Below, piece by piece: positions 9,327-62,242 of a stretch of DNA of 64,000 nt. The position numbers and the translations under genes were made by a program. Numbering within the stretch: position 1 is the first letter of the stretch; each line of letters opens with the position of its first letter. The notes under the pieces were generated by a model. That model made no database searches and was not told where the DNA came from. It saw only the letters and a program-made list of their open reading frames with translations. The stretch is from the IMG/VR virus record IMGVR_UViG_3300047321_000238, positions 1-64,000 of that record, one strand, 5' to 3'.

Positions 9327-12300
9327 TTACAGAGCATCTTTTATAGCTTTCTGAATATCTCTATCATTAATATTACCGTAGTTATCATTGATATTCATGC
9401 TTATATTTACAGAAGATGAAGTTCCGCTAGATATTGCTTGTTGAATAGCAGATATCGCATGGTTCTTACCTTTATCTGATCTAGCATTAATATTAACAAC
9501 ATAACCTTGTTGGCCTCCCATACTAGATGGCATCATACCTTGATCCATTAATCCTTGTTGTGGTTGTTGATAATCATTAGCTTCTTCCATAGCTTGAGTA
9601 TCTGCAGGTCTTGGTCTTCCTCCTACATATCCTAACATCATAACTCCTGCAGCAATTCCTACTGCACCCATTGCTATCTTGCTACCTTTAGCAGCTTTAA
9701 ACAAATCTGCAGCACCTTCAACAATTTTTCTACCGATACCTTTTGCTTCATCACCAAGTTCTTCTTCAGCTCCAGTTACGACTTTATCTATAATGTTTGG
9801 TCCTCCCATTATAGAATTTTTAGCTACATCGTTCATATCTAAGAATTTAAATATATCACTAATATCTGAATCAGATTTCTTCATAATATTAATATATGAG
9901 TCTTGAACGTTTGGAAGATTAGCTGATGATACAGGTCTAGTAATTGCTCCAGTAACACCTGCCATAGATTGTCCTACAGAAGAGTACTTTAAAAAATCTC
10001 CTGTATGTGCAACATCTTTCAAAGAACCTATTGTGTTTACAAAATCTCTTACCATTCTAGATTGTAACTTCTCTTTATTTTCCTTACTTTCCATCATAGT
10101 AGAGAAAGCTTGTTTAGTCAATGATTTTCCGCCATTTAATTCCTCAGCGGCTATATTTTGGAACGTCTTAGATTTATTCCAATAGTAATCATGGTCTACA
10201 TCCTCTACAACATATTTTTTAGACCATGCTTTCATGTCTTCTAAATGTTGATTCATATCTCCTTTTTTTCTAATGAAATTTTCAACACTATTGTTCCATT
10301 GTTTAGCTTTGTCTGGATCAAGTCCTTTAATAGAAGACTTAGAAGAGATAGCAGCTTCTTCTGTTAAATACATCATGTTATATAACAATGATGATTTGTA
10401 ATTATAATCTTCAGAAGTTTTATCCAACGCTGTCATTGCAATGTTCTTAACTTTATAGTTAGTTACATTTGTTTCACCGATACCATTTTTAGCAGCCTTA
10501 GCTACAAACTCATCTTTGTTTTGTTGATAAGCAGTTGCTATACGATATTCATCTACAGCATTCTTATAACCTGCATGGTCATCTTTAAACTGTTCTTTAA
10601 ATTTATCAATTACTACTTGATGACTTCCAGTATCCATTGCTAATTTAACATTATTAGAATGTTTAATTAACATCTTTTCCATATCTGAAAGAGAATAGTT
10701 TTTTGTATCCATCATAGCACTATAGACTTTTCCATCTATAATTCTTTGACTTGCAATATCTTCAATTCTATTTCCAGCTGTTGCAATTCCTTGTTCTTTT
10801 GCAACTCTATCTCTTACTTTTTGATCCCAATGGTGATTTTCATTAACAGCTCTTGTCATTAACATATCTTCTTGAGATTGTATGAATTCACTTTTTGAAG
10901 TATTTCCGTTATATACATAATTAGAATAAGACTTTCCATTATTATCAGTTATTCTAGCTATCGCAAAATTATCTCCATCATGGTCCATCTTCATAGAAGC
11001 TCCAGTATGACCTAATGCTTTTAACTGATTGCCTCTAAGAGTTGTATCTAGATATCCCATAACAACTTTATCTGAAGATTCTTGGTTACGAGGGAATCTA
11101 GTAGCTAAGAAAGTATCTCCATTAGTAGATAAATGTTTGACCATTTTCTCTTTAGCATCTGTTGCATTTACGAAATCTTTACCAAGAAATTCTTTCATAA
11201 AATCTTCTTTAAAGTATCCCATCTTTTCGAATGCTTCATGAGATGCACTTACCGCATCAATTAATTGACCTTTTGAATAACGTTTAAGTAACGTCTCTCC
11301 ATCGAACATAGCAGTATCTAAAAATGTTTTACCATTTAGATTCTTTAAGTTTTCATAAGTATCTTCACCTAAAGCCAGGTTCGTATTTATAGTTAAACTC
11401 GAAGCTTTACCAAAAACTGATTGAGAAAGTCTAGTAGATATTAAATCACCAGCTAAACCGTTTTTACTTGTTACATCATGCTTTTGCATTTCTTTGATTT
11501 CGCCAACAAGCTTTCTAGCATAATTTTGTTCACGAATTAAGTCATCTGAACCTTCTTTAAGATTTCCGCTATTAATTCTTTGTAATGAACTTTGTAAACT
11601 ACCTAATGATTTAATATGGTTAGTCTTAATTAAACTATCTTCAAAATGACGTTCTGGCATTCTAGCTATAGCTAAATGTTCTTCATTCCCACCTAATCCA
11701 GTCTTTATCATAATGTTATGACTATAAGGATTATTAGCTGCAGAAACTATAGTATTTCCTTGACCACCTATATCTAAATCTAACCAACCAGCTTCATGAG
11801 GTTTTAAGTTACTTAGATCAACTTCTTTAAAAGCATTGTATGCATTTTTGTTATTTGATACTAAAGCATCATATTTATCTTGTGAATAAACTTTAGAATT
11901 GAAGTCTAAAGCTCTAACTCCTTGTTGATAAGAATAAAGCTTTTCTGCTTTTTCTACAGATATCTCATGAGTTGAATCTTTATAGCTTTCTAACAAATGC
12001 TTATGAGTACGTTTATCTTTTCCTTTAAGGTCAGATAATCTTGTTTCTCCATATCCTATTAAAGTTCTACCTCTTAGTATTGAAGTAACTGGATCTAACA
12101 TACTTTTATTTAAATACTTTTCAGATATCTCTCCACTTTCATTTAAAGCATGCCCAAAGTATTTGTTGAATTCTGTAGGATTCATTCTTTCACGAGCTAA
12201 AGCCATTGAATCATTGTTATAGAATTCCTTTTGTAAATTCAAGTTCATTCTATTATCAAACTTTAAACCTTTTTGATTAGCTATGCCTTCAATTTGATTG

Positions 12301-15300
12301 TCTATATCAGCTATCCTAACTGAGTGGTCAAGTGTTTTATCTTTCCTCATTTCAGCTGTTAATTGATTACGTTCTTTAGATAATTCATTAATATCTACAT
12401 TGCTTGAGTAAGTTCCAGATTGATGATCGTATGCTTGAATTGTATGAGAGTAACCTGAATGGCCAACAACATTCTTCTTGTCATTTAACACAAGATTTTG
12501 ATTATTCAATACTTCTTGTAGAATCTTACCTTCTCCTCTTACTAACCCATACTTTGCAAAGTCCTTATCGAAGCCAGCTACATTAATCCTATCTACATCA
12601 TCAGTTATTAATGTACCATTCTTTATTTTTAACTTATCTCCAAAAAGAGCTTTATAGTATTTTCCAAGATCCTTTTTATTAATCTTCTCATTTCGTTGTA
12701 AACTCTCTATAATGTTAGTAGCAGCTAATGAAATAGATTCATGCTTAGTTGCTTCTAAACTTGTAGTTTGAGCTACTCCTTTAAATGCTGGGAATAATTC
12801 TTGTAATGTATCTGAGAAAGCAAATCTTTCTTTAAGTATTCTATCTTCAAAATTCTTTCCTAATTGAGGTGTTAAAAAATCTTCTATATATTCTCTTGAT
12901 AGGTATTGTCCATGAAGTCCTTTAAAGTTTTTAGATTCTAAATCTTTTGCTAAAGTAGAATCGATTGAACCAATAGCCATATCCATTGAATCAACAGTTG
13001 ATTTTTCTGAAGCATCATTATAAATCTTATGACCAAAGTTATCGTATTTATTAATAACTTGATAGTTGAAATTATACTCTTCATTTAAGAAGTCTAAAGC
13101 TGCTTGACCAGTTAGCTTTCTACTTTTAATAGCTTTATTAAGTTCTCTTTGAGATACGACATCTCCATGCTTATTAAAGAATCTACCTCTAAATACACCA
13201 TCAAATTTAGATTGAACTATATTCTTTTCTGAACCGAATGCTCCTAAGACTTGTTCTCTCTTTACTTCATATCCTAATTGATATTTAATATTGCCGTCTG
13301 CATCTATTGTAGGAACTAATTTATGACTTTCTTTAATTGCATTAATAACACTAATGTTTTGATTATGAGCTATTATTAATTCTTTTTTTGCATTAATTAA
13401 TTGTGAATTAGTTTTATAGAAAGCAGCGTATTGTACTCTAGAATCCATTATAGATTGTTGTTCATAAGTACTTAAACTCATTGCTTTCTCTGCTAATGCT
13501 TCGGAAGCTTTACTAAGTTCAGCTTGTGTTAATTTTCTTCCATAATTATTAGACAAGAATTTGCTGAATCTATTTGATTTACCTTCTCTTACTTTTATTA
13601 CATCATCAATAAATTGATTCTTTAAAGTATTAGAATCCATTTGCATATATTTCAATGTTAACCCGCCAGTGTATTTTCCATTGTGGTTAACATATTTGTC
13701 TCCAGCAGAAGACATTAACTTACCGCCAATTGACATGTTTTTTGCTAGTTCTGAATCTTTCTTTAGATATTCATTTATATCTTTTTTAAGATCACGTCTA
13801 TCATATAATACAGTGTTTTCTCTTTGAATAGAAACAGATCTTCCTGTCTTATCGAACTTAGCTATACCATGTTCGTATGAACTATTATCAACAGTTAAAA
13901 TACCTTTAGCTAAGTTTGTATCTTGAGTATGAGGATTTACTGTTTTAGCTAATTCCTTTAAATTTAAGCCATCGATATTTCCTAGATCAGCTCTTTCTTG
14001 AAGCATTGATAATATAGGATTAAGATATTCATCAAAGAATAAATTTTGTTCAGAAGCTAATAATTTGTTAATTTTATCAGGTCTGTAGTCTCCTTTTTTC
14101 ATTTTCTTAATCAAGTCTTTCATGCTTGCAGAAGACTTATCACTTATATTATAAGTTGTTTCTATTTCACTTAATAATCCAGAATGTTGTAATTCAGGCA
14201 AAATACCTACTATTGGATTAGTATTAAAATACATTGCTCTTTTTATTGTATTACTAAAATTAGCATTTTCTTTTCTAGGACCAATTTCTCTTAATACTCC
14301 TGAATCTTTTTTTATCTTATATAAAAGAGATTGAATAATATCTCTATCTCCGTCTCTTGCACTTTTAATAACTTCTTTATAAGTTCTAGTTTTACCTAAA
14401 GCTTCTTGTACATTTGAAGTTATTCTTACATGATCAAGAACATCATGAGCTGAGACATTACCTGGCTTACCTGTTCTAGATAGAATTTCATTTACATTTA
14501 AACTGAAGTTAGTTGCATAATCATTGTTGTTGATTCTATGATTAATAACTCCATCATTTAAAACGTATTTATACATATCAAAGAAATGTTGTTCTCCATT
14601 TCCATTCGTAAAGAACATGTTAGCATTTTTACCTCTACCATTTACGCCTAGAGTTATACCAGTGTCTTTAAGACCTTCAATCAATTGTTCTACTCTAGTA
14701 GTGGCATCTTGCTTACTGAATCCATATTGAGCCTTCATCCATTTTTGTTGATCTGAATTTAAACCCTTAATTTGCTTTTCAAAATCATTTTGTGAAAACG
14801 TCATGAAATAATTGTTTACTACATCTGAAACTAAAGTCTTATTTTTTTCATCAGCAATATAAGTTCTAGAGTTAACTGATTTCATTTCATTAGTAATTAA
14901 TGATTTTAATTTACCTGGCTCAACTCCTGCAATCATACCTGTTAAAGTATCTACATTAGAGTAATCTTGTATAGTTCTAGCAAACTCTAATCCAAAAGCA
15001 GGATTGTTTTTTCTTTCAACATCTACAAATGAATGCAATCTTGTTGTCATTTCATGATTTAATTGTGAATAATTACCGCCATTTTGGTATGAGAATACTT
15101 CTTCTTTTGATAAACCATTCCATACTCCTTTAAATCTAGGATCTTCCCCTATAGCATCATAAGCTGAATTTAAAGCAGTGAAACCAGCATTAGCTTTCTT
15201 GGATTCTTTTACATTCTTAAAGTCATTGCCATGGAACATGTTTAATAAACCATCATTCTTTGTTAAATCTAAAGAAATGAATTTGCTATTTTCTCCAGCA

Positions 15301-17930
15301 ACAGTATAACCTTGATGTGTTTTTTCTATCTCTGGAAATAAGTCTCCTCTTAAGAAATCTATTTTCTCTAATTCATCTCCTGTAAATATAGAAGATTTAG
15401 AATTACTTAATGTTTCAGTAGTTGCTCCAGGGAGTTGTTCTAATACATTGCTCATTACGCTTTGGAATATAAGATTCTTTTGAGCTTTTAATGCTTTAGA
15501 ACTAACACCTTTTGTTCCTTGACTTAAACCTAATTCAGCAAACACATCTTCCATAGTATTTAACAATGGACTTAACGCTTCTGAGTATTTATCTGTTATT
15601 AATGCATTTGCAACAGTTTCAGGCATCAGTCTCATTTCTTTAGTATTATGATCTTCCCACCCTAATGTTGCAGTTAGGTTTTCCATAAGTCCTTGAGTGA
15701 TATTAATTCCTGCAGTTTTATTCTTAGATATCATTTCTGCAATAGTTTGAGAAACTCTTTGATGAGTTGCGTTAGCAGCATTAGTTGTATATCTATGAAG
15801 TTTAGCTACATCTTCATACTCTAGTTTTCTAAGTTTTGATGCAGGACTATCTACATGCATTCTATAAGAACTTCTATCTTTTATCATTTCCCATGCTTTA
15901 TCTGGATCTTCTATGCTCTCTAAAATTACAGCTCCATTTTCATTTTTCATTGTTTTTAAATTTAGAGCTTTAAGATTGTCTTTCATGATATGCTCTTCAC
16001 CGTTTTCGCCAGCACGAGCTACATACGTTCCAGTCATAGTAGGTATTTGGTTCTCATTAGTTAATAGCGTATAGAAAACTGTAGAATCTTCGTAAGTAAC
16101 ATCTTTACCAAACTTAGCTTCAATCATTTTCTTAGTTTCATAAGGAGTAGATTTCATTACAGTTAATTTATCTAAAGTTGAGTATTCTTGATAGTATTGT
16201 CTATCACTAGGTATAGGTAATCCTAAATCTGTGAATGCTTTTTTCCATGCATCTCCTTCATGATTTAAATCAACACTAGAGAACTCGTGAGTATATAAAG
16301 CACCTGACTTAGGACCGTATCCTTGAATATCTTCTTTAGTTACTTTTCCATCAGCACTTATTCTGAAACCATCATAAGTTTTATATGAACCATCTATTGG
16401 ATTATGAGAAAAACTTAATCCACCCTTATTAGAATTCCAATTCTTTTTTCCTGTCTTATCCATAAGGAATACAGCTTTTCCGCCATTTCTATCTGTCATA
16501 GGAATATTATGTTTTAAGTCAGTTAATTTGCTATTAACTTTCTTAGTCATTCCAAACATATATTCACCATAAGACATATCTTTACCATTTATATTTATAG
16601 AATTGTCTGCAAATATATGAAATAAGTTATTTTCATCAGCCTGTGCATTATGGGCAGATACTGACTTGTTTCTTCCTTTATTAAATAGGAAGTTAAATTG
16701 ATCTTCAGTAGCTATACCGAATTTTCCAGTAGCTTGCATTCCTTGTGGTATATGAGAAGCTTGACCAAAGTTTTCTTGAGCATATTTTACAGATTGATAT
16801 AAATCTACATGCTTTCCAGCTTCGTGTCCTACATTTTCTCCTAATATCATTCTTGCACCTGGATCATCGAATATGTCACCATTTTGAGATATAGCAACAC
16901 GATTGTTATATGTTAATCCAGGAGTACTGTTGCTTATTCCTCCATATACTAAATCAGTATATTGTTTAGTATATTTTTTCTTATAATCAGATAATGTTCC
17001 TAATCCATTTTCAGCCAAGTATTGTTCTTGACGCTTACCTATATTTCTATATTCATCAAGACCAATTAAAGCGTTATCTATATTCTTTGTTATATTATCT
17101 GGATCATCAGCACCCGTAATTCTAAATTCAAATCCATTATCTTCATTTTGTTTCACTTTAAAAGTAGGATCACTTAATAAACTTAATCTGCTAATATATA
17201 CGTTATCTCTACCAGTAAGTTCATTAGGAGTTTTACCTCTTAAGCTTGTAATATAATTTTTTACCTCTTGGTGTTCTTCATGTGTAAAACCAGCTACACT
17301 ATTAAGAGTATCTATTGGATTTTTAGATTTAACACCGTTTGCGTTTACTCCCCAAACAGAAGCTGAGAATTCAGTAATATAATCGAATTGTTGATGTCCT
17401 TCCGCATTTACTCCACCTAAAGTTTCTAAATCGTAACTTATAATATTTCCACCATTTTTCATGATGTCCATATAGTTATTGAAAGATCTATATAAGTCTT
17501 GGAAATCAGTCATTTCTGTTTTTGTTGTTCTATTATAATTAGTATAATTAATATCATGAGCCATACCTATAACATTTTTAATTAGTTGAGCACCAGATTC
17601 TTGTTTAGTTAAAGTAGATAAGTTTCCTGATATGCCTTGAAAGAATCCGCCTTTATATAAATTTCCATAAACAGCTTCTCCGATTTTAGAATCACTTTTA
17701 AAACTAGTAGGCTTCTTAAAATCTTTTGATTCTGTAGATAGAACTGTTATAGTATCACTAAAATCTGTTATAAAATCTTTCATCCCTGGATGTATTCCAG
17801 CAACAGTATTTCTTTCTTGATCGCTCATGCCTTTATATAAATCACTATCTAGTATTTTTCTTCTATTATTAGTTTGTTCTTTATTAAATTGATTTGCACT
17901 TTTTCTACTAAGCCACAATTTTTTAAACAT
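9327..17930 (-). CDS. Giant single-chain two-barrel RNA polymerase-like protein (2867 aa) with N-terminal DEDDh exonuclease domain; candidate virion RNAP
   Basis: Beta'-like: KNGLAGDLISTRLSQS, TRFP and MDHDGD. Beta-like: YEQQSI and GHKIYNDASEK (K-x7-K). DEDDh: YDLET, NGDIFD, HNAQAD. C-terminal hydrophobic helix. Confidence 0.7.
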   Translation of the reverse strand: MFKKLWLSRKSANQFNKEQTNNRRKILDSDLYKGMSDQERNTVAGIHPGMKDFITDFSDTITVLSTESKDFKKPTSFKSDSKIGEAVYGNLYKGGFFQGISGNLSTLTKQESGAQLIKNVIGMAHDINYTNYNRTTKTEMTDFQDLYRSFNNYMDIMKNGGNIISYDLETLGGVNAEGHQQFDYITEFSASVWGVNANGVKSKNPIDTLNSVAGFTHEEHQEVKNYITSLRGKTPNELTGRDNVYISRLSLLSDPTFKVKQNEDNGFEFRITGADDPDNITKNIDNALIGLDEYRNIGKRQEQYLAENGLGTLSDYKKKYTKQYTDLVYGGISNSTPGLTYNNRVAISQNGDIFDDPGARMILGENVGHEAGKHVDLYQSVKYAQENFGQASHIPQGMQATGKFGIATEDQFNFLFNKGRNKSVSAHNAQADENNLFHIFADNSININGKDMSYGEYMFGMTKKVNSKLTDLKHNIPMTDRNGGKAVFLMDKTGKKNWNSNKGGLSFSHNPIDGSYKTYDGFRISADGKVTKEDIQGYGPKSGALYTHEFSSVDLNHEGDAWKKAFTDLGLPIPSDRQYYQEYSTLDKLTVMKSTPYETKKMIEAKFGKDVTYEDSTVFYTLLTNENQIPTMTGTYVARAGENGEEHIMKDNLKALNLKTMKNENGAVILESIEDPDKAWEMIKDRSSYRMHVDSPASKLRKLEYEDVAKLHRYTTNAANATHQRVSQTIAEMISKNKTAGINITQGLMENLTATLGWEDHNTKEMRLMPETVANALITDKYSEALSPLLNTMEDVFAELGLSQGTKGVSSKALKAQKNLIFQSVMSNVLEQLPGATTETLSNSKSSIFTGDELEKIDFLRGDLFPEIEKTHQGYTVAGENSKFISLDLTKNDGLLNMFHGNDFKNVKESKKANAGFTALNSAYDAIGEDPRFKGVWNGLSKEEVFSYQNGGNYSQLNHEMTTRLHSFVDVERKNNPAFGLEFARTIQDYSNVDTLTGMIAGVEPGKLKSLITNEMKSVNSRTYIADEKNKTLVSDVVNNYFMTFSQNDFEKQIKGLNSDQQKWMKAQYGFSKQDATTRVEQLIEGLKDTGITLGVNGRGKNANMFFTNGNGEQHFFDMYKYVLNDGVINHRINNNDYATNFSLNVNEILSRTGKPGNVSAHDVLDHVRITSNVQEALGKTRTYKEVIKSARDGDRDIIQSLLYKIKKDSGVLREIGPRKENANFSNTIKRAMYFNTNPIVGILPELQHSGLLSEIETTYNISDKSSASMKDLIKKMKKGDYRPDKINKLLASEQNLFFDEYLNPILSMLQERADLGNIDGLNLKELAKTVNPHTQDTNLAKGILTVDNSSYEHGIAKFDKTGRSVSIQRENTVLYDRRDLKKDINEYLKKDSELAKNMSIGGKLMSSAGDKYVNHNGKYTGGLTLKYMQMDSNTLKNQFIDDVIKVREGKSNRFSKFLSNNYGRKLTQAELSKASEALAEKAMSLSTYEQQSIMDSRVQYAAFYKTNSQLINAKKELIIAHNQNISVINAIKESHKLVPTIDADGNIKYQLGYEVKREQVLGAFGSEKNIVQSKFDGVFRGRFFNKHGDVVSQRELNKAIKSRKLTGQAALDFLNEEYNFNYQVINKYDNFGHKIYNDASEKSTVDSMDMAIGSIDSTLAKDLESKNFKGLHGQYLSREYIEDFLTPQLGKNFEDRILKERFAFSDTLQELFPAFKGVAQTTSLEATKHESISLAATNIIESLQRNEKINKKDLGKYYKALFGDKLKIKNGTLITDDVDRINVAGFDKDFAKYGLVRGEGKILQEVLNNQNLVLNDKKNVVGHSGYSHTIQAYDHQSGTYSSNVDINELSKERNQLTAEMRKDKTLDHSVRIADIDNQIEGIANQKGLKFDNRMNLNLQKEFYNNDSMALARERMNPTEFNKYFGHALNESGEISEKYLNKSMLDPVTSILRGRTLIGYGETRLSDLKGKDKRTHKHLLESYKDSTHEISVEKAEKLYSYQQGVRALDFNSKVYSQDKYDALVSNNKNAYNAFKEVDLSNLKPHEAGWLDLDIGGQGNTIVSAANNPYSHNIMIKTGLGGNEEHLAIARMPERHFEDSLIKTNHIKSLGSLQSSLQRINSGNLKEGSDDLIREQNYARKLVGEIKEMQKHDVTSKNGLAGDLISTRLSQSVFGKASSLTINTNLALGEDTYENLKNLNGKTFLDTAMFDGETLLKRYSKGQLIDAVSASHEAFEKMGYFKEDFMKEFLGKDFVNATDAKEKMVKHLSTNGDTFLATRFPRNQESSDKVVMGYLDTTLRGNQLKALGHTGASMKMDHDGDNFAIARITDNNGKSYSNYVYNGNTSKSEFIQSQEDMLMTRAVNENHHWDQKVRDRVAKEQGIATAGNRIEDIASQRIIDGKVYSAMMDTKNYSLSDMEKMLIKHSNNVKLAMDTGSHQVVIDKFKEQFKDDHAGYKNAVDEYRIATAYQQNKDEFVAKAAKNGIGETNVTNYKVKNIAMTALDKTSEDYNYKSSLLYNMMYLTEEAAISSKSSIKGLDPDKAKQWNNSVENFIRKKGDMNQHLEDMKAWSKKYVVEDVDHDYYWNKSKTFQNIAAEELNGGKSLTKQAFSTMMESKENKEKLQSRMVRDFVNTIGSLKDVAHTGDFLKYSSVGQSMAGVTGAITRPVSSANLPNVQDSYINIMKKSDSDISDIFKFLDMNDVAKNSIMGGPNIIDKVVTGAEEELGDEAKGIGRKIVEGAADLFKAAKGSKIAMGAVGIAAGVMMLGYVGGRPRPADTQAMEEANDYQQPQQGLMDQGMMPSSMGGQQGYVVNINARSDKGKNHAISAIQQAISSGTSSSVNISMNINDNYGNINDRDIQKAIKDAL

Positions 17931-18775: not shown

Positions 18776-18849
18776 AATAAAAACCTTCTTTCTATTTTTA
18801 TTATTTCTAATATATTACTTTGGTAATGCTTAAAATACATATATTTAAT

Positions 18850-25035: not shown

Positions 25036-25109
25036 TAATTTCACCTCCAAAAAAAAGATAATAATAAAAGCTTGTTAACTTCTATTACTATCTCTTTTAA
25101 TCTCTATAA

Positions 25110-30190: not shown

Positions 30191-30211
30191 TTAATATTCC
30201 TCCCTAAAAAA

Positions 30212-30248
30212 ATATAAGAGATGTAGCTCTTGTCCACATCTCTTATAT
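30212..30248 (-). terminator. Intrinsic terminator after tail tube gene
   Basis: atataagagatgt...acatctcttatat inverted repeat followed by a T-run on the minus strand. Confidence 0.7.
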
Positions 30249-30270
30249 ATTACAGTCTATATTCTTTTTA

Positions 30271-30927
30271 TTACCATGAAGCACTTATTGCTGAATCTTT
30301 TTCATCATCAAGAGATTTCATGTAATCAATTCTTCTAGCTACAAAAGTATAAGCTTTTTCAGTAGAAACTGAATCGATAGAATATCCTGAACCTTCGTTA
30401 AGTAATTCTACTCCATAGATAACAAGTACAGCTCTTTGGCCATATTCATTAGCAAATGTAATAGTAATATCAAATGGAAGGATTTCATCAGCATATATTG
30501 GAGTATATTTTCCAACTAAATCTGAAACCTTACCAGCAGTTGTTCCATTAGTATTAACTGTAGCGGAACCACCTGAGGCGTAACTAGACATTTGAGAGTC
30601 CCAATCTTCGATAGAAAGATATTCTCTTGAACCTTCAGATTTGAATTTTTGAATTCCTAAAGTTTCACCGCTAAGTTTTTCTTTGAATTCTTCGATTAAT
30701 GCATCTCTGTTAAACACTGTAAATACAAGTGTTCCAGCGATACCTCTCTTTCCTCTTGAGAAAGATCTTGGTTCAGCACTACCCATTGTATAAACTGGAG
30801 CCTTTTCTCTAGATACGCTGTAAGTGATACCTTGAAGTTCACCAACAACTTTACCATTAAAAGCAGCTACAATATCGCATCCACTAAAAGTAGTATAAGT
30901 TTTAGTATAAGTTTCTGTTAATGCCAT
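30271..30927 (-). CDS. Tail tube protein
   Basis: 218 aa, immediately after sheath; beta-rich tube-like motifs; strong RBS. Confidence 0.7.
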   Translation of the reverse strand: MALTETYTKTYTTFSGCDIVAAFNGKVVGELQGITYSVSREKAPVYTMGSAEPRSFSRGKRGIAGTLVFTVFNRDALIEEFKEKLSGETLGIQKFKSEGSREYLSIEDWDSQMSSYASGGSATVNTNGTTAGKVSDLVGKYTPIYADEILPFDITITFANEYGQRAVLVIYGVELLNEGSGYSIDSVSTEKAYTFVARRIDYMKSLDDEKDSAISASW

Positions 30928-39308: not shown

Positions 39309-39421
39309 CTTAATTTTTCCTCCTCATTATCTAATCATTTATATTTGTGGAAGTACACTCTCATGCACTTCTCACAACTATATTACTAATCAAATTTATT
39401 TTATTACTATTCTTATTGAAA

Positions 39422-49393: not shown

Positions 49394-49429
49394 AACGTAA
49401 CATCCTCCAAACATTTAATTAATAGCTAT

Positions 49430-52861: not shown

Positions 52862-53140
52862 GTTAAATTCCCCCTTGTTCTTTTCTTTTCTCTATATATT
52901 ACTATCTATATCTCATATATTAATAACGTCTTGCCATATATTACTTATTCTAAATATTCTATTTAATTTCCAAATATTACCTTATATAGAGATGAAAAAT
53001 TTATAAAAAATAATTTTAAAAAATAGAAAAGTTGAACTTTTAAAAAAAGCCTATAGGGAAAAACGAAAAATATAAAAAATTTCTAGGGGAAGTAGGTATA
53101 TATATATATGTATATATGTTGAAAATGTAGCCCCATGGGT
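52862..53140. promoter_or_regulatory. Divergent late/early control region with three TATTAC(T/C) copies, A-tracts and a TA run
   Basis: Strand switch; TATTACT at 52897 and 52939, TATTACC at 52975; A5-A7 tracts 52995-53080; (TA)n 53097-53117. Confidence 0.5.
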
Positions 53141-53394
53141 ATCATTATCATTATCAAGTTGAACTGTTTCAGTAACCGAGTTGAATGGAATAACATGCAA
53201 CGTCATGCCACAACTCATGGAGGATCATGAAAAACTTATCTCTATCTGTCAAGATAACCTTAACTTTAAAAGACTTATTAATAACTAGTACAGTAAAGGC
53301 TTATATATGTGCATACATATATAGGTCTTATAGTGTACTAGATACACAAGCAATAGACTACATATAGTAGGTGAGCATAAGGAGGACAACTAGT

Positions 53395-56017: not shown

Positions 56018-56045
56018 TGTAAAAGGTGAAAGGTGGATAAACAAA

Positions 56046-56663: not shown

Positions 56664-56724
56664 TAGATTATATACGTACTAAAGACAAATAAACTCCACC
56701 AGACCTTAGCAAGCAAATTCGCTT

Positions 56725-57156
56725 GAAAGGAGGTGATGCCTGGCAAGATATACGAACTTGGGTAGGCTGCTTGAACATGTTGTGCTTTTGATGCAGCAAC
56801 AGTTGGTTGGGTGGGACAGAAACACAACAATGGGGGATGAAATAAACAGATTTCACTAACGAAAGGAAGAAACAAACAGAATGATATTTTCAAAACTAAA
56901 GACGCTAAAGGAAGACTCGGCAAATTACCAACAACTATTCAGCCTGGAGGTTGATGAATTAAATTTTCTTCAATCTCTAGAAAGGAGGTTGATAATCTAA
57001 ATTTTTATCAGCCACCGAAAAGGAGGTTGGTAAGGATTATGACGTAACTTTACACATATCATTTAAGGAGGTTGATACTCACACATGGACTAATATTAAA
57101 GGAGATGATGCTTGGCAAGAAATAGAAATGACTATAAATATGAAAGGAGGTGATGC
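56725..57156 (+). repeat. Array of 7 (A)AAGGAGGT(T)GAT motifs; candidate ncRNA or leader
   Basis: GGAG(G/A) cores at 56729, 56946, 56984, 57022, 57067, 57101 and 57146 with no long ORF. Confidence 0.75.
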
Positions 57157-57298
57157 TAAATCTAAGACTAATAAGACTACTGAAGGATTGTTCGTAATCT
57201 TTCAATGCATGGGCCTATAGTATTTGAACTTAGGCACTATGAGTGACAGGGATAATGGGGTACAAATAAAAATATATGATGAAAAGGATGGATACAAA

Positions 57299-60200
57299 AT
57301 GATAAACACAAACACATTAACTAATGGAACTACTACAACAAACACAAATGAAGGGATGGATGTACAAATGGTAAATATCAATGTAACAAACGTAGCTAAA
57401 ATAGTAGGGGTATCAAATGAAGAAGTTGTAGCATTAGCTATAAGATTAGGTTTAGAAGTTTCAACATCAGGTAAGAAAATAAACAATGTTATTTCTACTG
57501 CAATTGTAGTTGAAGCTGTTAATGATTTAATAGCTAAAGATGAAGTTGCAGTTACAAATATAGTAAACAATAATGAAGGGATGGATGTAAAAATGGTTAA
57601 CAAGATTAAAGAGGAAATAATGGAAATGGTTTATTCTGAAATGAACAAGGAAATAGCTAAACAAGAAATTAGAGACGAATACTTAAACAGAGTTGCAACT
57701 GTTGCAGCTATAGTTGATGAATCTAATAAAAAGTACAAAAGAAATACTTTAAGCAAAGTAGAATTAGTTGATTATGTAGTAGCTAACAATATCGAAGTTA
57801 ATGACAAAGAATTAAGAGCACTATATTCTCAATTAAATGCTGCAAGAGATAAAGAAGCTAAATCAGAATTAGTTCACAAGATCATAGATCAAATGAATGA
57901 AGGTAAATTCACTTATAAAATGTATGCAACTGCTAATAAGTACAAGCACCTTTTATCTGAAGATGATACAATTACTTTTGAATTAGCATTAGATGTAGCT
58001 CTTAATAAGGCTTCTATGAAGAACTACAAGAACCTATTAGCTGTTAAAAGATGGACTAAAGATATCACTGTTGCATTATTAAGAAGAGTTGTTTGCTATA
58101 CTGGTAATCAATATGAAACAGAAGTAGCTCCTCAAATGTTCAGTTCTCTAATCAGAGCTTGTGATGTTACAGTTAAAGATGTTGCAGATTCTAAGATGAC
58201 TTTAAATGGATACACTACTGATGAGTTACTATTATTCTCATTCGATAAAGATGTATTAAAATTAACTGGAAATAATGACAGAGAAGTATTAGCTAAAAAA
58301 GATTACCTAGCTAAAGTATTCTATATCATTGCTGGATTATCTGAACAAAAGGTTTATATAGTTGAAAGAAAATCAGGTATTGCAGATGTTTATACTAATA
58401 TCAACAAGATCAAATTAAATGAAGGTGAAGTTATAAAACAATATGAATTCTTAGGAATAACTCCATCTGGTTTAAGATCTGGAACTATGACATTAGCTAT
58501 CACTAAAGAAATTCACGCTGATGGAACTGTTGTTGAAAGAGATAGAAGAGTTGAAATCATGGACAAAGCTTCTGATAATTCATTCAGCATTAACTTTATC
58601 GTAGGTGCGAATGAAAATGGACAAGCTATATTCAAAGATTGCGAATCAGTACTTGATGCATTTAAAGAAATGTCTAGAATGATGTTATGTGCTACATCTT
58701 CAAAAGTGCTTGGTAAATTAGACTCTTATGTTGTATTAGATAATTTATCTTTTGGTGCAGGATATAATGCTAAAGATACTAACTCTCCTGCTAAAATGGG
58801 TGAAGAAAATTTCGTAGATTGTCAAGATACTACTGATGGTTTAGGATTAATATCTAATGATATGTTAAAAGAAAATCTTCAAGCTATGAACATTCCATGC
58901 TCAATTAAAGACTTATTAGGAATGACATTCCAAGCTAGAGGTGGCGGATTAAAGATTGCTGCAATGTCAAGATCTAAAGAAGCTATTAGACTAGAAGCAA
59001 AAGCATCATTAAGCAGAGGAGCATCTGTATTAAGAGCTGTATTCAAAGGACAAGAAGTTAAAGCTAAAGATCTAACTGATGAAATGTTAGATAACATGCA
59101 AGGATTGTTTGATGGTAATGGTATGAAGTTAATCGATCACAATGCTGAAATCGAATTAGTAATGCTTAAGAAAGCTTATTCATCTGACTCTAAATTATCT
59201 GATGTTGTTAATATTATAATGATGGTTAATGATGAACAAGCTACTACAGCATTATTATCTTCTAAAATAAAAAGTCAAATCTTAGACAAATTAAAAGACA
59301 TTGGTATAAACGTAGATTACAATGCAGAAACTGATGAAGTTATCAGCGTAAAATGTGATCTTAAGAACTTAAAAAGAATCAACAATGACAGTCAAACAGT
59401 TGAATGGATGTTTAGATCTCTTCCTGAAACTATGATTGCATTAGCTCCTGGTGTTCAAAAGACAAACTTTAATAGCTTATTGAAAGGTTTAGCTAACCTA
59501 ATCAACGAGCTTAATGTTGAAGTTAATTGTGAATATACTGTTGTTCAATCAGATCCAGCAGTTAGATTTGGTGTAAGAATAATAAAAGAAGATGAAGTAT
59601 TCTGCCCAAGCTTAATAGAAGTAAATAAAGTATCAGGTGTTAGACATCCAGTATCAAACTTATTTGCTGTTTCTACATTCAAGACACTTACTCTAAAAAC
59701 TATCTTAAAGAGAATTGATAAATTGAATGTATCTCTTGAAGTTAAAAACATGTTATTTGAATTCTACAAAGGAGTAGAAGGTTATGCTATAATACCAGCA
59801 TCTCACTACTACATGGAAAAACATGATGGAATGGATTTCGATATCGATGCTATGCAATTTTTCTTAGATCAAGAAGTAGTAGCAATACTTGAAAAGACTT
59901 CTGATATAGGAACAATAATTGATAGATCTATTGATGAAGAAATGGATTGTTCTATTAAGGAATCTAATGATGACCATGCTATCAAAGCTTTCTACAAAGA
60001 TATTAACAAGAAAGATTTCCACCCTATAGCTTATGATGTAAAAGTATCTGAAGAAAAGATAGCACCAGTTAAAGCATTAAAAGGAATGGTTATGCCTAAG
60101 AAGATTAATGTTGCTTCTACTGAAGATAATCATTACAAGAAAAATGCAAATGGAAGATACTCATTAGACTTCTCTTCAGTTGCTATGATGGTATTAGATT

Positions 60201-62242
60201 ATTTCTTAAACCCAATAGATTCAGTTGGTATCATGGCAACAAACTTCTATAATAATGCTAAAATACTTATGGCATTAAAATCAATTAACACTGAAATCAC
60301 TAAAGAAATGAAACAATTCATAGTTCAAGGAATGAGAACAATGTTTTCTTGTAGTGGTTTAAAGAAGTATTCTTCTCCAATCAGAAAGAACAATGACGGA
60401 ACAAAATTTAACTACAACGATAGAAATAAAGTTGTTCTATGCAAAGATGTTTGTCACAAAATAATCAAAACATTTATCAACTCTAAAGGAGATTTTGCAG
60501 ATTGTATTCAATTCTTAATTGATGTATGTATTTGTAGTAGATATCCAGCTGAAACTTCTATTGATAGTGCTAAGAAAATGTATAAAGTTATAAACATGTT
60601 TGCATTATCTGGTTGTATTAAAGCTATGGGTTGTAAAAATGCTGTTAAATTCTTAAACTTTGATCCATATATGTTAGATGACCAAGGTAACTCTATTGAA
60701 GAAGTAGAAACTACAAAAGCATTCACTAACATTATTGACATCTTTAATGCAGCTCAACCAAAAAATGCTCTACAATATTCAACAAACAATTTCTTTGGAT
60801 TAAAATTAATAAAAGAAGAAATGTCATGTGTTGGTTGGGAAGATGCTGATAAGGCTATGTTAGCTTTCAATACAGAGAAAAAAGTAGCAGGTATTAAAGA
60901 TCCTACTTATCTATTAAAAGAAAGACTAATGAACTTTGCTAATTCAGTTATAGTATTTGCAGCTAAAGAATTAGAAGCATTTGTTAAATCAGATGAAGCT
61001 AATGCTATCAGAAAAGAATTCAAAGGTTTCTACAATTCAGAAGATAATTATTTCAGAGTTGATAAAGTAGTATCTAACATCGTTGGTACTTATATCACAT
61101 TAACTGAATCAATCAAAGCTTCAGAAAATGATGAAATAGATGATATAACTGCAAAGAAATATCTTAAGACAAATGCATTACAAGCTCTAATGAACACAGC
61201 TAAACTTTCATTTAAAACAGCTAGAAAACCAGTATCTGATGAAGAAATTGGAGCAGGTGTGTTCTATTATATGATTACTTCTTTTGAAAAAGAAAAAGAC
61301 AATGTATGTACTTCAGTTAACTCTAAGATTCTTGATATCTTCCAAAAAGAGATATTAGCATTCTTAAAATCTAAAGGATATGATATGCTTGCTGCTGAAG
61401 AAATATTATATGCTGTTAATCCTGTAACTAACAGACAAGTTAAATTAAATACAACAGAAGGATTAACATGTTCTGCATATAATGGTCATGGTACAATTGA
61501 ATTAGAAGATGGTTCAATCTATTTATTAACTCTAAAGAATAAGAAAGCATCTTTTGATAATGGTACTATTTCTATAGTAGATGATAAGTATGTTGTTGTT
61601 CAACAAAGAAAAACTTTAGAAGAAAATATACAATCAGGATTCTACTTTGGTGCTAAAATGGAAAAAGGAATATTCAACAAAGCTAATCTTCTAATGCAAG
61701 ATATTAAAAAGACTACTGGTGATTACAATGAATACAAAGCAGCATTAGCAGAAATAAATCCTAATAACATTTTAGCTGAGACACAATATGATGAAATTCT
61801 TTTCAGAACAAGAAGAGAAATGGACGAAAGAGGAAAATCATATACAGCTAATCTTTTAATTGGTATGAAAGATGATCAAGAATGTTTAATAGCTGAGTTA
61901 TACCTTAATACAATCGTTGCTCAATTATTACAAACTGCTGAGTTATCTGAAAGCAATGTAAGATTATTCATGACTGAAAATAGTTGTACTGTTAACATTA
62001 TTGAAGACTCTCTATTAGCTGAAGTTGAATCAGTTAGCACTCCTGACACTATAAGTGATTCATTTGGATTAGATGACTTAGAAGGATTCAGTAACTCAAT
62101 AATAGATTATTCTTGTTATGATGTTACTCCAGTTCAAGAAAACTATGATGAAAAACAATTCGTTGCAATTACAACAAACTACGATATTCCTCAAGTTGAC
62201 ATGTGCAATGACGAAAACTATTTAAATGGTTTAACTCAATAA
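57299..62242 (+). CDS. YonO/cRdRP-like single-subunit DNA-dependent RNA polymerase (about 1647 aa)
   Basis: TDGLGLIS, FQARGGGLK, VRHP and DGMDFDID in the order found in the cRdRP/YonO family; likely ATG 57299 behind GAAAAGGA (ORF track starts 57224). Confidence 0.8.
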   Translation: MINTNTLTNGTTTTNTNEGMDVQMVNINVTNVAKIVGVSNEEVVALAIRLGLEVSTSGKKINNVISTAIVVEAVNDLIAKDEVAVTNIVNNNEGMDVKMVNKIKEEIMEMVYSEMNKEIAKQEIRDEYLNRVATVAAIVDESNKKYKRNTLSKVELVDYVVANNIEVNDKELRALYSQLNAARDKEAKSELVHKIIDQMNEGKFTYKMYATANKYKHLLSEDDTITFELALDVALNKASMKNYKNLLAVKRWTKDITVALLRRVVCYTGNQYETEVAPQMFSSLIRACDVTVKDVADSKMTLNGYTTDELLLFSFDKDVLKLTGNNDREVLAKKDYLAKVFYIIAGLSEQKVYIVERKSGIADVYTNINKIKLNEGEVIKQYEFLGITPSGLRSGTMTLAITKEIHADGTVVERDRRVEIMDKASDNSFSINFIVGANENGQAIFKDCESVLDAFKEMSRMMLCATSSKVLGKLDSYVVLDNLSFGAGYNAKDTNSPAKMGEENFVDCQDTTDGLGLISNDMLKENLQAMNIPCSIKDLLGMTFQARGGGLKIAAMSRSKEAIRLEAKASLSRGASVLRAVFKGQEVKAKDLTDEMLDNMQGLFDGNGMKLIDHNAEIELVMLKKAYSSDSKLSDVVNIIMMVNDEQATTALLSSKIKSQILDKLKDIGINVDYNAETDEVISVKCDLKNLKRINNDSQTVEWMFRSLPETMIALAPGVQKTNFNSLLKGLANLINELNVEVNCEYTVVQSDPAVRFGVRIIKEDEVFCPSLIEVNKVSGVRHPVSNLFAVSTFKTLTLKTILKRIDKLNVSLEVKNMLFEFYKGVEGYAIIPASHYYMEKHDGMDFDIDAMQFFLDQEVVAILEKTSDIGTIIDRSIDEEMDCSIKESNDDHAIKAFYKDINKKDFHPIAYDVKVSEEKIAPVKALKGMVMPKKINVASTEDNHYKKNANGRYSLDFSSVAMMVLDYFLNPIDSVGIMATNFYNNAKILMALKSINTEITKEMKQFIVQGMRTMFSCSGLKKYSSPIRKNNDGTKFNYNDRNKVVLCKDVCHKIIKTFINSKGDFADCIQFLIDVCICSRYPAETSIDSAKKMYKVINMFALSGCIKAMGCKNAVKFLNFDPYMLDDQGNSIEEVETTKAFTNIIDIFNAAQPKNALQYSTNNFFGLKLIKEEMSCVGWEDADKAMLAFNTEKKVAGIKDPTYLLKERLMNFANSVIVFAAKELEAFVKSDEANAIRKEFKGFYNSEDNYFRVDKVVSNIVGTYITLTESIKASENDEIDDITAKKYLKTNALQALMNTAKLSFKTARKPVSDEEIGAGVFYYMITSFEKEKDNVCTSVNSKILDIFQKEILAFLKSKGYDMLAAEEILYAVNPVTNRQVKLNTTEGLTCSAYNGHGTIELEDGSIYLLTLKNKKASFDNGTISIVDDKYVVVQQRKTLEENIQSGFYFGAKMEKGIFNKANLLMQDIKKTTGDYNEYKAALAEINPNNILAETQYDEILFRTRREMDERGKSYTANLLIGMKDDQECLIAELYLNTIVAQLLQTAELSESNVRLFMTENSCTVNIIEDSLLAEVESVSTPDTISDSFGLDDLEGFSNSIIDYSCYDVTPVQENYDEKQFVAITTNYDIPQVDMCNDENYLNGLTQ

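What the first reader, a model, noticed from the sequence alone, without database searches (positions are those of the whole stretch)
9327..62242. Two architecturally different single-chain two-barrel RNAPs in one phage: a possible host-independent transcription cascade
One RNAP is beta/beta'-like and sits in the virion module. The other is cRdRP/YonO-like and sits in the divergent early region. Inference: the injected RNAP transcribes the plus-strand early genes, including RNAP 2, which then transcribes the minus-strand late genes, including RNAP 1. This parallels N4 (T7-like enzymes) and phiKZ/AR9 (multisubunit enzymes) but uses two single-polypeptide two-barrel enzymes. I found no convincing sigmaA -35/-10 pair before the early genes, which is consistent but weak.
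Basis: inference. Interest (0 to 1): 0.85.

Follow-up and report, generated by a model that had tools for sequence, protein, structure and literature searches.

The report
Two single-chain RNA polymerases, jumbo phage
A 248-kb metagenomic jumbo phage encodes two unrelated-looking single-polypeptide two-barrel RNA polymerases, one inside a giant tail protein and one in the early region, but it also carries a sigma factor and sigma-type late promoters, so it probably still needs the host polymerase for late genes, as the known phage P23-45 does.

Summary

B is flanked by orthologues of Bacillus phage 0305phi8-36 gp145 and gp147. It is therefore the positional counterpart of that lineage's putative tape-measure protein, which was detected in virions by mass spectrometry. 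Both genes co-occur, about 45 kb apart on opposite strands, in all three large related viral contigs.

Host independence is unlikely. The genome encodes a SigB/F/G-like sigma factor. The late operons, including the one holding B, are preceded by a conserved bipartite TTAATA-N14-AGTAATATA motif.

No transcription data exist. I rate this a new variant of a known kind.

The parts
9327..17930 (-). Gene B: 2867-aa giant protein at the tape-measure position of the tail module. It holds an embedded two-barrel RNAP core and is the candidate virion RNAP.
   Evidence: ORF. It has 29 metagenomic homologues of 2755-3056 aa. It is flanked by orthologues of 0305phi8-36 gp145 and gp147 (blastp; annotation). 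hhalign to Bacillus phage WH1 gp095 'virion structural protein' gives E 3.3e-5 over TNRYP...KADHDGDN.
10011..13493 (-). RNAP core of B (residues 1480-2640), with both barrels in the order beta-like then beta'-like.
12996..13034 (-). Beta-like barrel motif FGHK(1635)-x7-K(1643)ST.
   Evidence: K1635, E1642, K1643 and T1645 are invariant in 23 sequences. In the model the motif lies in a beta-hairpin, strands 155-159 and 163-169. The G-x-K-x7-K-[GS] spacing matches E. coli RpoB GDK1065MAGRHGNK1073G, and the motif is unique in B.
10971..10985 (-). Catalytic-type DHDGD (residues 2316-2320), preceded by TRFPxxQE (R2278, P2280) 38 residues upstream.
   Evidence: Invariant. In the model it lies in a loop between strands 823-827 and 842-847. 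For comparison, E. coli RpoC has NRAPTLH...NADFDGD.
16626..17453 (-). N-terminal DEDDh 3'-5' exonuclease-like domain of B (residues about 160-435).
   Evidence: D167, E169, N350, D355, H427 and D432 are invariant. Three of 21 homologues hit Pfam RNase_T, best E 6.9e-5. The window's own copy does not reach significance.
9327..9698 (-). C-terminal module of B: a Gly/Ala-rich hydrophobic segment, a P/Q linker and a conserved terminal domain of about 60 aa. The module is shared with the lineage's putative tape-measure proteins.
   Evidence: Hydropathy and end-sequence comparison with WH1 gp095 and 0305phi8-36 gp146. blastp of B against WH1 gp095 C-termini gives E 8e-5. The weak hhalign to gp146 covers the last 55 residues.
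57224..62242 (+). Gene D: QDE-1/RDR/crAss-gp66-type single-chain two-barrel RNAP, the candidate non-virion early RNAP. The likely true start is 57299.
   Evidence: The profile search finds 34 close and about 150 distant relatives. Two of the distant relatives carry Pfam RdRP PF05183 above the cut-off.
58286..61288 (+). Polymerase core of D (P0001 residues 330-1330).
59834..59848 (+). Catalytic-type DFDID of D, with RHPxS at 59642-59656.
   Evidence: D517, D519, D521, R453, P455 and S457 (alignment numbering) are invariant in 31 sequences. Motif position.
62253..62286 (+). Intrinsic-terminator-like hairpin plus T-run directly after D. Together with the long leader it suggests a monocistronic unit.
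   Evidence: It is the only terminator-like site found in 52.4-64 kb.
56946..57076 (+). Leader of D with four copies of GGAGGTTG[AG]T, including a 38-nt tandem repeat. Role unknown.
   Evidence: These are the only four occurrences of the word in the 248-kb genome.
52895..52965 (-). Three tandem copies, 21 nt apart, of the bipartite late-promoter-like motif TTAATA-N14-AGTAATATA at the head of the minus-strand block.
   Evidence: 0-2 mismatches.
39379..39407 (-). The same bipartite motif, 71 nt upstream of the major capsid gene.
   Evidence: MCP assignment.
30246..30274 (-). The same bipartite motif, 56 nt upstream of ORF 27467-30190.
18811..18840 (-). Partial copy (AGTAATATA with a weak upstream half) between gene C and the small ORF that precedes B. 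It is the nearest candidate promoter for B.
18850..25050 (-). Gene C: orthologue of 0305phi8-36 gp145 and WH1 gp096 (virion protein), upstream neighbour of B.
   Evidence: blastp E 5e-69 and 4e-54. The 0305phi8-36 annotation notes mass-spectrometry detection.
38..9283 (-). Gene A: orthologue of the 0305phi8-36 gp147 baseplate hub with lytic domains, downstream neighbour of B.
   Evidence: blastp E 1e-60 and 1e-79. phrog_20474 at 3.7e-163.

Best explanation
The phage is a complete 247.9-kb jumbo myovirus of the Bacillus phage 0305phi8-36 / Moorella MTATph1 lineage. It carries two single-chain two-barrel RNA polymerases and most likely uses them in a three-step relay that ends on the host enzyme.

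Step 1 (inferred). The RNAP core embedded in the giant protein B, which sits at the tape-measure position of the tail module, is delivered with the DNA. It transcribes the first plus-strand genes, including D.

Step 2 (inferred). D is a QDE-1/YonO/crAss-gp66-type enzyme made from a monocistronic early unit. It transcribes the long plus-strand replication (middle) block, which includes a phage sigma factor gene.

Step 3 (inferred from the sigma gene and the promoter architecture). The SigB/F/G-like phage sigma directs host core RNAP to bipartite TTAATA-N14-AGTAATATA promoters in front of the structural operons, including the operon that contains B.

What is shown: both proteins have the fold and the invariant catalytic motifs of two-barrel RNAPs. 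B occupies the position of a protein that mass spectrometry detected in virions of a cultured relative. The two genes co-occur. A sigma gene and a conserved, strictly intergenic bipartite motif exist.

What is not shown: enzyme activity, packaging of B in this phage, and which enzyme reads which promoter.
For: Genome context:
- The record is complete, with direct terminal repeats, and its large terminase is 43% identical to that of Moorella phage MTATph1.

D:
- Fold.
- Invariant motifs.
- Link to Pfam RdRP through distant relatives.
- Positional analogy to 0305phi8-36 gp99, an RdRP-like RNAP at the start of that phage's early arm.
- A terminator follows D.

B:
- Fold.
- Motif.

B as a virion protein at the tape-measure position:
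-.
- WH1 gp095 carries the same DHDGD.

Co-occurrence:
- Both genes lie about 45 kb apart on opposite strands in G001, G002 and G003.

Sigma factor:
-.
- Sigma-like ORFs are present in all three relatives.

Bipartite motif:
- All 10 copies with at most 1 mismatch are intergenic and correctly oriented. There are 140 matches at up to 3 mismatches, against 91 +/- 10 expected.
- The motif is conserved in relatives: 8/3/5 hits against 2/1/0 controls, on the strand of the virion module.

Other:
- No canonical Rpb1, Rpb2 or T7-type RNAP domain was found elsewhere in the genome.
- Mechanistic precedent: P23-45 (PMC10770324).
Against: - The second barrel of B is supported only by a motif and by whole-model alignments to single-chain RNAPs.
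- No early-promoter motif could be found, so steps 1 and 2 have no cis-element support.
- 0305phi8-36 gp146 lacks any DxDxD, and WH1 lacks a detectable gp99- or D-like gene. The pairing is therefore not universal in the wider lineage.
- The bipartite motif could in principle be the promoter of D rather than of the sigma holoenzyme. SPbeta YonO, a relative of D, transcribes late genes (PMC5467207 abstract, and my own knowledge).
- A few copies of the motif also precede plus-strand genes such as NrdD.
- No RNA data for this phage exist.
Confidence: 0.5

Rival explanations
1. This is a fully host-independent two-step cascade. Injected B transcribes the early genes, including D. D then transcribes all late genes, including B, and the bipartite TTAATA-N14-AGTAATATA element is D's own promoter.
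For: - Both RNAP candidates are real.
- There are no good sigmaA promoters in the early arm.
- The YonO-type enzyme of SPbeta transcribes late genes (PMC5467207).
- The motif is conserved across relatives that also conserve D.
Against: - The genome and its relatives keep sigma-70-family genes with regions 2 and 4. Such factors only work with host core RNAP.
- The motif has the two-block, 14-nt-spacer geometry typical of group-3 sigma promoters.
- In the two best-studied analogues, N4 and P23-45, late genes are read by host RNAP (N4 from my own knowledge).
Confidence: 0.2
2. Only D is a working transcriptase. The RNAP-like core in B has another role, such as primer synthesis or transcription-coupled pulling of the 248-kb DNA into the cell, or it is a structural relic. 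Early genes are started by host RNAP at weak or atypical promoters.
For: - B's fold evidence is weaker.
- The 0305phi8-36 counterpart gp146 has no DxDxD at all, yet that phage is viable.
- B also carries an exonuclease-like domain, which suggests a nucleic-acid-processing role beyond transcription.
- Hardies et al. raised injection as a possible role for a phage RNAP.
Against: - All catalytic-type residues of both barrels are strictly invariant across 23 homologues down to 26% identity. This argues for retained polymerase chemistry.
- Sigma-70-type sites are not enriched in the early arm.
- B and D co-occur strictly in this clade.
Confidence: 0.2
3. B is not a polymerase at all. In this reading the DHDGD and K-x7-K motifs, together with a DPBB-like fold, are chance or convergent features in a large tail or ejection protein.
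For: - There is no Pfam, PHROG or PDB sequence hit.
Against: - Of 48,161 chains, the best matches are almost exclusively two-barrel RNAPs, and all 50 best Foldseek hits are beta'.
- Two separate motifs appear with the correct spacing and order.
- All key residues are invariant.
Confidence: 0.08

Closest known systems
Thermus phage P23-45 gp96 (tape-measure-fused virion RNAP) plus gp64 (non-virion RNAP), Chaban et al. 2024, PMC10770324
   Same: - Two single-polypeptide two-barrel RNAPs in one phage.
- One is part of a giant tail-lumen or tape-measure-type virion protein.
- The other is encoded among the first genes expressed.
- Late genes are left to host RNAP.
   Different: - The host phage here is a 248-kb myovirus of an unrelated lineage.
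- The RNAP core sits in the C-terminal half of B (residues 1480-2640), behind an exonuclease-like domain, rather than at the N-terminus.
- B and D show no mutual similarity, whereas gp96 and gp64 cluster as paralogues.
- D is closer to QDE-1/RDR2 than to gp64.
- A phage sigma factor, rather than small host-RNAP modifiers, would redirect the host enzyme.
Bacillus phage 0305phi8-36 gp99 and SPbeta YonO (RdRP-like single-chain DNA-dependent RNAPs)
   Same: - D shares the fold class.
- D occupies the same genomic niche as gp99: a monocistronic gene at the start of the early arm of a jumbo myovirus with syntenic structural genes.
   Different: - There is no significant sequence or profile similarity between D and gp99 (hhalign probability below 1%, although the motifs line up).
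- Pfam PF05183 does not hit D itself.
- D is about 450 aa longer.
- D's family often carries an N-terminal Rho_N/SAP-like motif.
crAss-like phage phi14:2 gp66 virion RNAP (PDB 6VR4)
   Same: - A QDE-1-like two-barrel enzyme with a DFDID catalytic motif, the same pentapeptide as D.
- It is carried in a giant protein next to the tail genes.
- Foldseek E to D is 1e-5.
   Different: - In crAss phages the QDE-1-like enzyme is the virion enzyme.
- Here the QDE-1-like enzyme (D) is in the early arm, and the virion-module enzyme (B) is of a different type with more beta/beta'-like motifs.
phiKZ/AR9 virion and non-virion multisubunit RNAPs; coliphage N4 vRNAP/RNAPII/host relay
   Same: - The logic of an injected polymerase followed by a phage-made polymerase.
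- B's best Foldseek hits are the AR9 and phiKZ nvRNAP beta'-N subunits.
- As in N4, the last step probably uses host RNAP.
   Different: - The enzymes here are single chains, not 4-5 subunits, and are not T7-like.
- No Rpb1 or Rpb2 Pfam domains are detectable.
- The phiKZ and AR9 groups lack sigma factors (PMC7824862).

Membership tests
Two-barrel (double-psi beta-barrel) RNA polymerase superfamily: D | DPBB-A loop with a DxDxD metal-binding triad | tested here: met
   DFDID is invariant in 31 sequences. In the model it lies in a loop before strand 522-526.
Two-barrel (double-psi beta-barrel) RNA polymerase superfamily: D | Overall fold superposes on solved two-barrel RNAPs across both barrels | tested here: met
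Two-barrel (double-psi beta-barrel) RNA polymerase superfamily: B | DPBB-A loop with DxDxD, preceded by an R-x-P strand | tested here: met
   R2278, P2280 and DHDGD 2316-2320 are invariant in 23 sequences. The spacing of 38 residues compares with about 35 in E. coli beta'.
Two-barrel (double-psi beta-barrel) RNA polymerase superfamily: B | Second barrel supplying two basic residues | tested here: inconclusive
   The invariant GHK-x7-KS motif has the same spacing as RpoB K1065/K1073 and lies in a beta-hairpin. No residue-level superposition on a beta barrel was obtained.
Two-barrel (double-psi beta-barrel) RNA polymerase superfamily: B | Overall fold superposes on solved two-barrel RNAPs | tested here: inconclusive
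Cellular-type RdRP / QDE-1 / YonO clade (Pfam PF05183): D | Significant match to the PF05183 model | tested here: not met
   D itself has no Pfam hit. Only distant relatives reached by D's profile (P0081, P0085) pass the cut-off. The structure places D nearest this clade.
Multisubunit-RNAP beta/beta' clade: B | Match to the Rpb1 or Rpb2 domain models | tested here: not met
   No PF00623 or PF00562 match anywhere in the genome, and none in B. The resemblance is limited to motif pattern and to beta' being the best Foldseek class.
Multisubunit-RNAP beta/beta' clade: B | SBHM/flap insertion in the beta barrel | not tested
   No residue-level structural alignment was available.
Virion-packaged, tape-measure-fused RNAP (P23-45 gp96 type): B | The polymerase is part of a protein present in virions | not testable with these tools
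   Indirect only. The positional counterpart 0305phi8-36 gp146 was found in virions by mass spectrometry. WH1 gp095 and its KLEB27-3 homologue are annotated as structural.
Virion-packaged, tape-measure-fused RNAP (P23-45 gp96 type): B | The gene occupies the tape-measure slot after the tail chaperones and before the hub | tested here: met
   The synteny sheath, tube paralogues, C (gp145 orthologue), B, A (gp147 hub orthologue) is shown. The C-terminal module is shared with gp146. The tape-measure assignment of gp146 is itself tentative.
Virion-packaged, tape-measure-fused RNAP (P23-45 gp96 type): B | Transcribes the first-entering genes, including the second RNAP gene | not testable with these tools
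   No RNA or ChIP data exist. No early promoter motif was found.
Sigma-factor-directed late transcription by host RNAP | Phage sigma-70-family protein with regions 2 and 4 | tested here: met
   Genome 132408-133655(+). Pfam r2 and r4 both match. TIGR02937 scores 83.8 bits against a cut-off of 42.9, and the best subfamily is SigB/F/G.
Sigma-factor-directed late transcription by host RNAP | Bipartite promoter upstream of late operons | tested here: met
   TTAATA-N14-AGTAATATA. All 10 copies with at most 1 mismatch are intergenic and lie 17-76 nt before same-strand starts. The motif is conserved in relatives.
Sigma-factor-directed late transcription by host RNAP | Transcripts start 5-9 nt downstream of the -10 block and are rifampicin-sensitive | not testable with these tools
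   Only a DNA run holds this phage. The RNA runs hold 5-12% of the words of the capsid gene, so they represent relatives at best.

The most novel reading that the evidence does not exclude
B defines a previously unrecognised family of virion RNA polymerase. In this reading it is a single-chain two-barrel enzyme with beta/beta'-type active-site motifs, fused to a DEDDh exonuclease, and built into the tape-measure-position protein of jumbo myoviruses. Cultured Bacillus phages WH1, Edson and KLEB27-3 would carry the same enzyme. It would transcribe DNA as the DNA leaves the tail and hand over to an unrelated QDE-1-like RNAP and then to a phage sigma on host core. One virus would then use three mechanistically distinct transcription machineries in sequence.
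Probability: 0.35. Interest if true: 0.75.

Novelty: new variant of a known kind. Interest (0 to 1): 0.6.

Why it matters
Current reviews treat jumbo phages in two classes: those that carry phiKZ/AR9-type multisubunit RNAPs, and those that lack RNAPs and rely on sigma factors (PMC13282480). This genome and its relatives combine two single-chain two-barrel RNAPs with a sigma factor.

This would extend the tape-measure-fused virion RNAP idea, so far known only from long-tailed Thermus siphoviruses, to a widespread clade of jumbo myoviruses. These are metagenomic contigs of 245-370 kb, and this record comes from a rhizosphere metagenome.

The DHDGD module is also present in cultured Bacillus phages (WH1, Edson, KLEB27-3), so the hypothesis can be tested directly at the bench. 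B and D are both very divergent from every curated RNAP model, which makes them useful data points for the deep history of two-barrel polymerases.

Tried and rejected
- Sequence-model searches on B and D all came back empty: Pfam, PHROGs, PDB phmmer/hmmsearch and tblastn against 50,697 phages.
- hhalign of B against D found nothing, so paralogy as in P23-45 cannot be claimed.
- hhalign of the D family against 0305phi8-36 gp99 lined up the right motifs but was not significant.
- The B profile found no match in 0305phi8-36 or Moorella MTATph1. The D profile found none in 0305phi8-36, MTATph1 or WH1.
- tblastn with gp99 found SPbeta-like phages but not WH1.
- The ESM Atlas search of B's N-terminal domain gave only sub-threshold metalloprotease leads. 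I rejected them.
- Early-promoter hunting failed. I tried shared k-mers among early intergenic regions, comparison of the leaders of D in four genomes and a home-made EM motif search. These recovered only Shine-Dalgarno sites, T-rich terminator tails, tRNA arms and small stem-loops.
- Rfam found nothing in 52-64 kb.
- The sequencing-run search found one DNA run, probably the source sample, and RNA runs holding only 5-12% of the capsid-gene words. I did not use read laying, because contigs of relatives could not show start sites.
Full report
CONTEXT. The window is the first 64 kb of a complete 247,883-bp IMG/VR virus record with a 128-bp terminal overlap. The window encodes these structural genes:
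- large terminase, 45976-47727(-)
- portal, 42408-44621(-)
- major capsid protein, 38094-39308(-)
- tail sheath, 30986-33934(-)
- several virion proteins

The phage is therefore a jumbo myovirus. Its terminase is closest to Moorella phage MTATph1 (43% identity) and to the Bacillus phage 0305phi8-36 group: WH1, Edson, KLEB27-3 and 0305phi8-36. Genes run on the minus strand up to about 53 kb and on the plus strand from 53 kb to about 185 kb. The rest of the genome encodes GyrB/GyrA, RecA, UvrD, an SNF2 helicase, the anaerobic ribonucleotide reductase NrdD, an NAD-dependent ligase and a DNA polymerase III alpha subunit. The only DNA run that holds the sequence is a rhizosphere metagenome.

THE OBSERVATION. 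Both ORFs are present as described. Neither matches any curated sequence model, any solved-structure sequence or any deposited phage genome. Both have metagenomic homologues. Gene D (57224-62242, plus strand) has 9 homologues by word search and 34 close cluster representatives by exhaustive profile search. Gene B (9327-17930, minus strand) has 29 homologues, many on contigs of 245-370 kb.

GENE D.
- Sequence motifs. Across 31 homologues the invariant residues include R-H-P-x-S and, 64 residues later, D-F-D-I-D.
- Predicted structure. An AlphaFold2 model of the core (1001 residues) is confident, with pLDDT 85.7 and pTM 0.84.
- Foldseek matches. The model matches QDE-1 along its whole length (E 1.4e-9). 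It also matches plant RDR2, the crAss-like phi14:2 virion RNAP gp66 (1e-5) and the P23-45-type non-virion RNAPs.
- Link to Pfam RdRP. D's profile reaches about 150 distant proteins over both barrels, and two of nine tested carry Pfam RdRP PF05183 above the cut-off.

D is therefore a QDE-1/YonO/crAss-type single-chain two-barrel RNAP, although it is too divergent for PF05183 itself.

D also sits exactly where the related phage 0305phi8-36 has its long-known RdRP-like gp99. That is a large gene on its own transcription unit at the head of the early arm (PMC7824862). D has a leader of about 440-640 nt. It is followed by the only terminator-like hairpin in the region.

GENE B. The family alignment has 23 sequences, down to 26% identity to B. 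It shows four conserved parts.
1. An N-terminal set of DEDDh exonuclease motifs: D167, E169, N350, D355, H427, D432. Three of 21 homologues hit Pfam RNase_T, with best E 6.9e-5.
2. FGHK1635-x7-K1643-ST.
3. TRFP(2278-2280)...MKMDHDGD(2316-2320).
4. A C-terminal module.

I fetched E. coli rpoB and rpoC to check the motif analogy. Beta has GDK1065-x7-K1073-G, and beta' has NRAPTLH-x29-NADFDGD. B therefore reproduces both signatures, with the same spacing and in the beta-then-beta' order.

The model of residues 1480-2640 has pLDDT 80 and pTM 0.71. All 50 best Foldseek PDB hits are the largest (beta'-type) subunits of multisubunit RNAPs, led by the AR9 and phiKZ non-virion RNAPs. The E-values are only about 1e-3.

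An independent scan of 48,161 chains ranks the hits as follows:
- phiKZ nvRNAP
- P74-26 gp62
- M. tuberculosis beta'
- plastid PEP
- AR9
- vaccinia, archaeal and eukaryotic largest subunits

The single-chain enzymes align across the whole model (residues 4-1161). That is what would be expected if both barrels are present.

These scores are modest and I treat B as probable, not proven. However, B is not a clear member of the multisubunit clade either, because no Rpb1 or Rpb2 domain is detectable.

WHERE B SITS. The gene upstream of B (C, 18850-25050) is an orthologue of 0305phi8-36 gp145 and WH1 gp096. The gene downstream (A, 38-9283) is an orthologue of the baseplate hub gp147 and WH1 gp094 (blastp E 1e-60 to 1e-79). 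B is therefore the positional counterpart of 0305phi8-36 gp146, annotated 'hypothetical tape measure protein; identified as virion protein by mass spectrometry', and of WH1 gp095 'virion structural protein'.

B, gp095 and gp146 share a C-terminal module: a Gly/Ala-rich hydrophobic segment, a P/Q linker and a terminal domain of about 60 aa. WH1 gp095 also shares the catalytic barrel, TNRYPTINKQ...KADHDGDN (hhalign E 3.3e-5). In contrast, 0305phi8-36 gp146 has no DxDxD at all.

The polymerase module is thus an insert or retention in some members of a conserved giant tail protein. This is the same design principle as the tape-measure-fused virion RNAP gp96 of Thermus phage P23-45 (PMC10770324).

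CO-OCCURRENCE. Pattern and profile searches of IMG/VR found three large related records: two complete at 245 and 247 kb, and one 154-kb fragment. All three encode both a B and a D homologue, 43-47 kb apart on opposite strands, as in the window. A fourth hit is a 37.6-kb fragment and cannot be judged. In the wider lineage the pairing is not universal. 0305phi8-36 has gp99 but no catalytic motif in gp146. WH1 has the DHDGD protein but no detectable gp99- or D-like gene.

DOES THE CASCADE HOLD? No transcript data exist for this phage, so I looked for cis and trans elements.

First, the genome encodes a 415-aa sigma-70-family protein with regions 2 and 4. It lies directly after gyrA in the plus-strand block (genome 132408-133655). 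It scores 83.8 bits on TIGR02937 against a cut-off of 42.9, and its best subfamily is SigB/F/G. Sigma-like ORFs are present in all three relatives. A sigma factor is useful only with host core RNAP.

Second, k-mer enrichment in intergenic DNA revealed AGTAATATA, which is preceded 14 nt upstream by TTAATA.
- With at most one mismatch there are 10 copies in the genome. All are intergenic and all lie 17-76 nt upstream of a start codon on the same strand.
- With up to three mismatches there are 140 copies, against 91 +/- 10 in Markov simulations.
- Copies head the minus-strand block (three in tandem at 52895-52965), the capsid gene, ORF 27467-30190 and several operons of the second minus-strand block at 205-225 kb. 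A few distal plus-strand genes such as nrdD also carry one.
- A partial copy lies just upstream of the small ORF preceding B.
- The motif recurs in the relatives above a reversed-pattern control, on the strand of their virion modules.

A two-block element with a short spacer is the architecture read by group-3 sigma factors. That statement rests on my knowledge of SigB/F/G promoters and was not tested here. I therefore think late genes, including B, are most likely read by host core RNAP plus the phage sigma. This contradicts 'host-independent' and 'RNAP 2 transcribes the late genes'. I cannot exclude that D itself recognises this element.

Third, the early arm shows no enrichment of sigmaA-type sites: 53 against 65.5 +/- 8.2 in shuffles. 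I could not find any recurrent early-promoter motif. Steps 1 and 2 of the relay therefore rest only on analogy with P23-45 and N4.

COMPARISON AND NOVELTY. The closest described system is P23-45. It has a virion two-barrel RNAP fused to the tape measure and an early-encoded single-chain two-barrel RNAP, with host RNAP for late genes. The present case differs in five ways:
- the virus lineage and morphology (a jumbo myovirus)
- the position and partners of the polymerase core within the giant protein
- the lack of kinship between the two enzymes
- D being QDE-1/RDR-like
- the presence of a sigma factor

D-type enzymes in this lineage were known (0305phi8-36 gp99; YonO). I found no paper that describes the B family or the DHDGD module of WH1 gp095 as an RNAP. 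That search covers only open-access text. I rate the finding a new variant of a known kind, with moderate to high interest, because cultured Bacillus phages make it testable.

Noticed in passing
window 53371-53850 (+): The first gene of the plus-strand (early) arm encodes a GGDEF diguanylate-cyclase-like domain protein of 159 aa (Pfam E 1.3e-20; TIGR00254 above its cut-off). A phage-made cyclic-dinucleotide enzyme expressed first could manipulate host signalling or defence.
   Followed up: partly
window 56946-57076 (+): The word GGAGGTTG[AG]T occurs four times in the whole 248-kb genome. All four lie in the leader of RNAP gene D, and two lie within a 38-nt tandem repeat. The word AAGGAGGTGATGC also repeats nearby, at 56727 and 57144. 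This may be a regulatory array or a set of small ORFs. No Rfam family matched.
   Followed up: partly
window 16626-17453 (-): The giant protein B starts with an apparently intact DEDDh 3'-5' exonuclease signature that is invariant in all homologues. Three of 21 homologues reach Pfam RNase_T. An exonuclease fused to a putative virion RNAP has, to my knowledge, not been described.
   Followed up: partly
window 52895-52965 (-): Three copies of the bipartite TTAATA-N14-AGTAATATA element are stacked 21 nt apart (two helical turns) at the head of the minus-strand block, facing away from the early arm.
   Followed up: yes
window 45976-47727 (-) and 48824-49414 (-): Two separate ORFs give terminase-large-subunit PHROG hits: the main 583-aa one and a weak 196-aa one about 1 kb upstream. 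In WH1 the annotated TerL is about 975 aa. The terminase may be split or interrupted here.
   Followed up: no
window 26418-30927 (-): Three adjacent ORFs of 349, 907 and 218 aa share an N-terminal domain that PHROGs labels 'major head protein' (phrog_9206). By synteny with 0305phi8-36 gp140-142 they are more likely tail-tube paralogues, so the PHROG label looks misleading.
   Followed up: partly
outside the window: genome 115.0-120.0 kb (L014 11087-15952): A cluster of 16 tRNA genes on the plus strand, two of them with odd anticodon loops according to ARAGORN.
   Followed up: no
outside the window: genome 69273, 71455, 71803 (+), and window 64059: A GTTTTTCTT(C/T)TGCACGC element, partly a small stem-loop, recurs in early-arm intergenic regions just upstream of Shine-Dalgarno sites. 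It could be an early regulatory or promoter element but has too few copies to judge.
   Followed up: partly
L026 38027-41683 and L028 22624-30237 (Bacillus phage 0305phi8-36); L027 24593-32140 (phage WH1): Distribution within the cultured lineage is mosaic. 0305phi8-36 has the RdRP-like gp99, but its tape-measure-position protein gp146 has no DxDxD. WH1, Edson and KLEB27-3 have DHDGD in that protein but no detectable gp99 homologue.
   Followed up: partly
P0006-P0009, L009, L011 (homologues of D): Many D-family proteins begin with a Rho_N/SAP-like helix-extended-helix motif (PF07498), for example MMNLTVKELKGLAKEAGIKGYSTMRKAELV. This suggests an N-terminal nucleic-acid-binding module.
   Followed up: no
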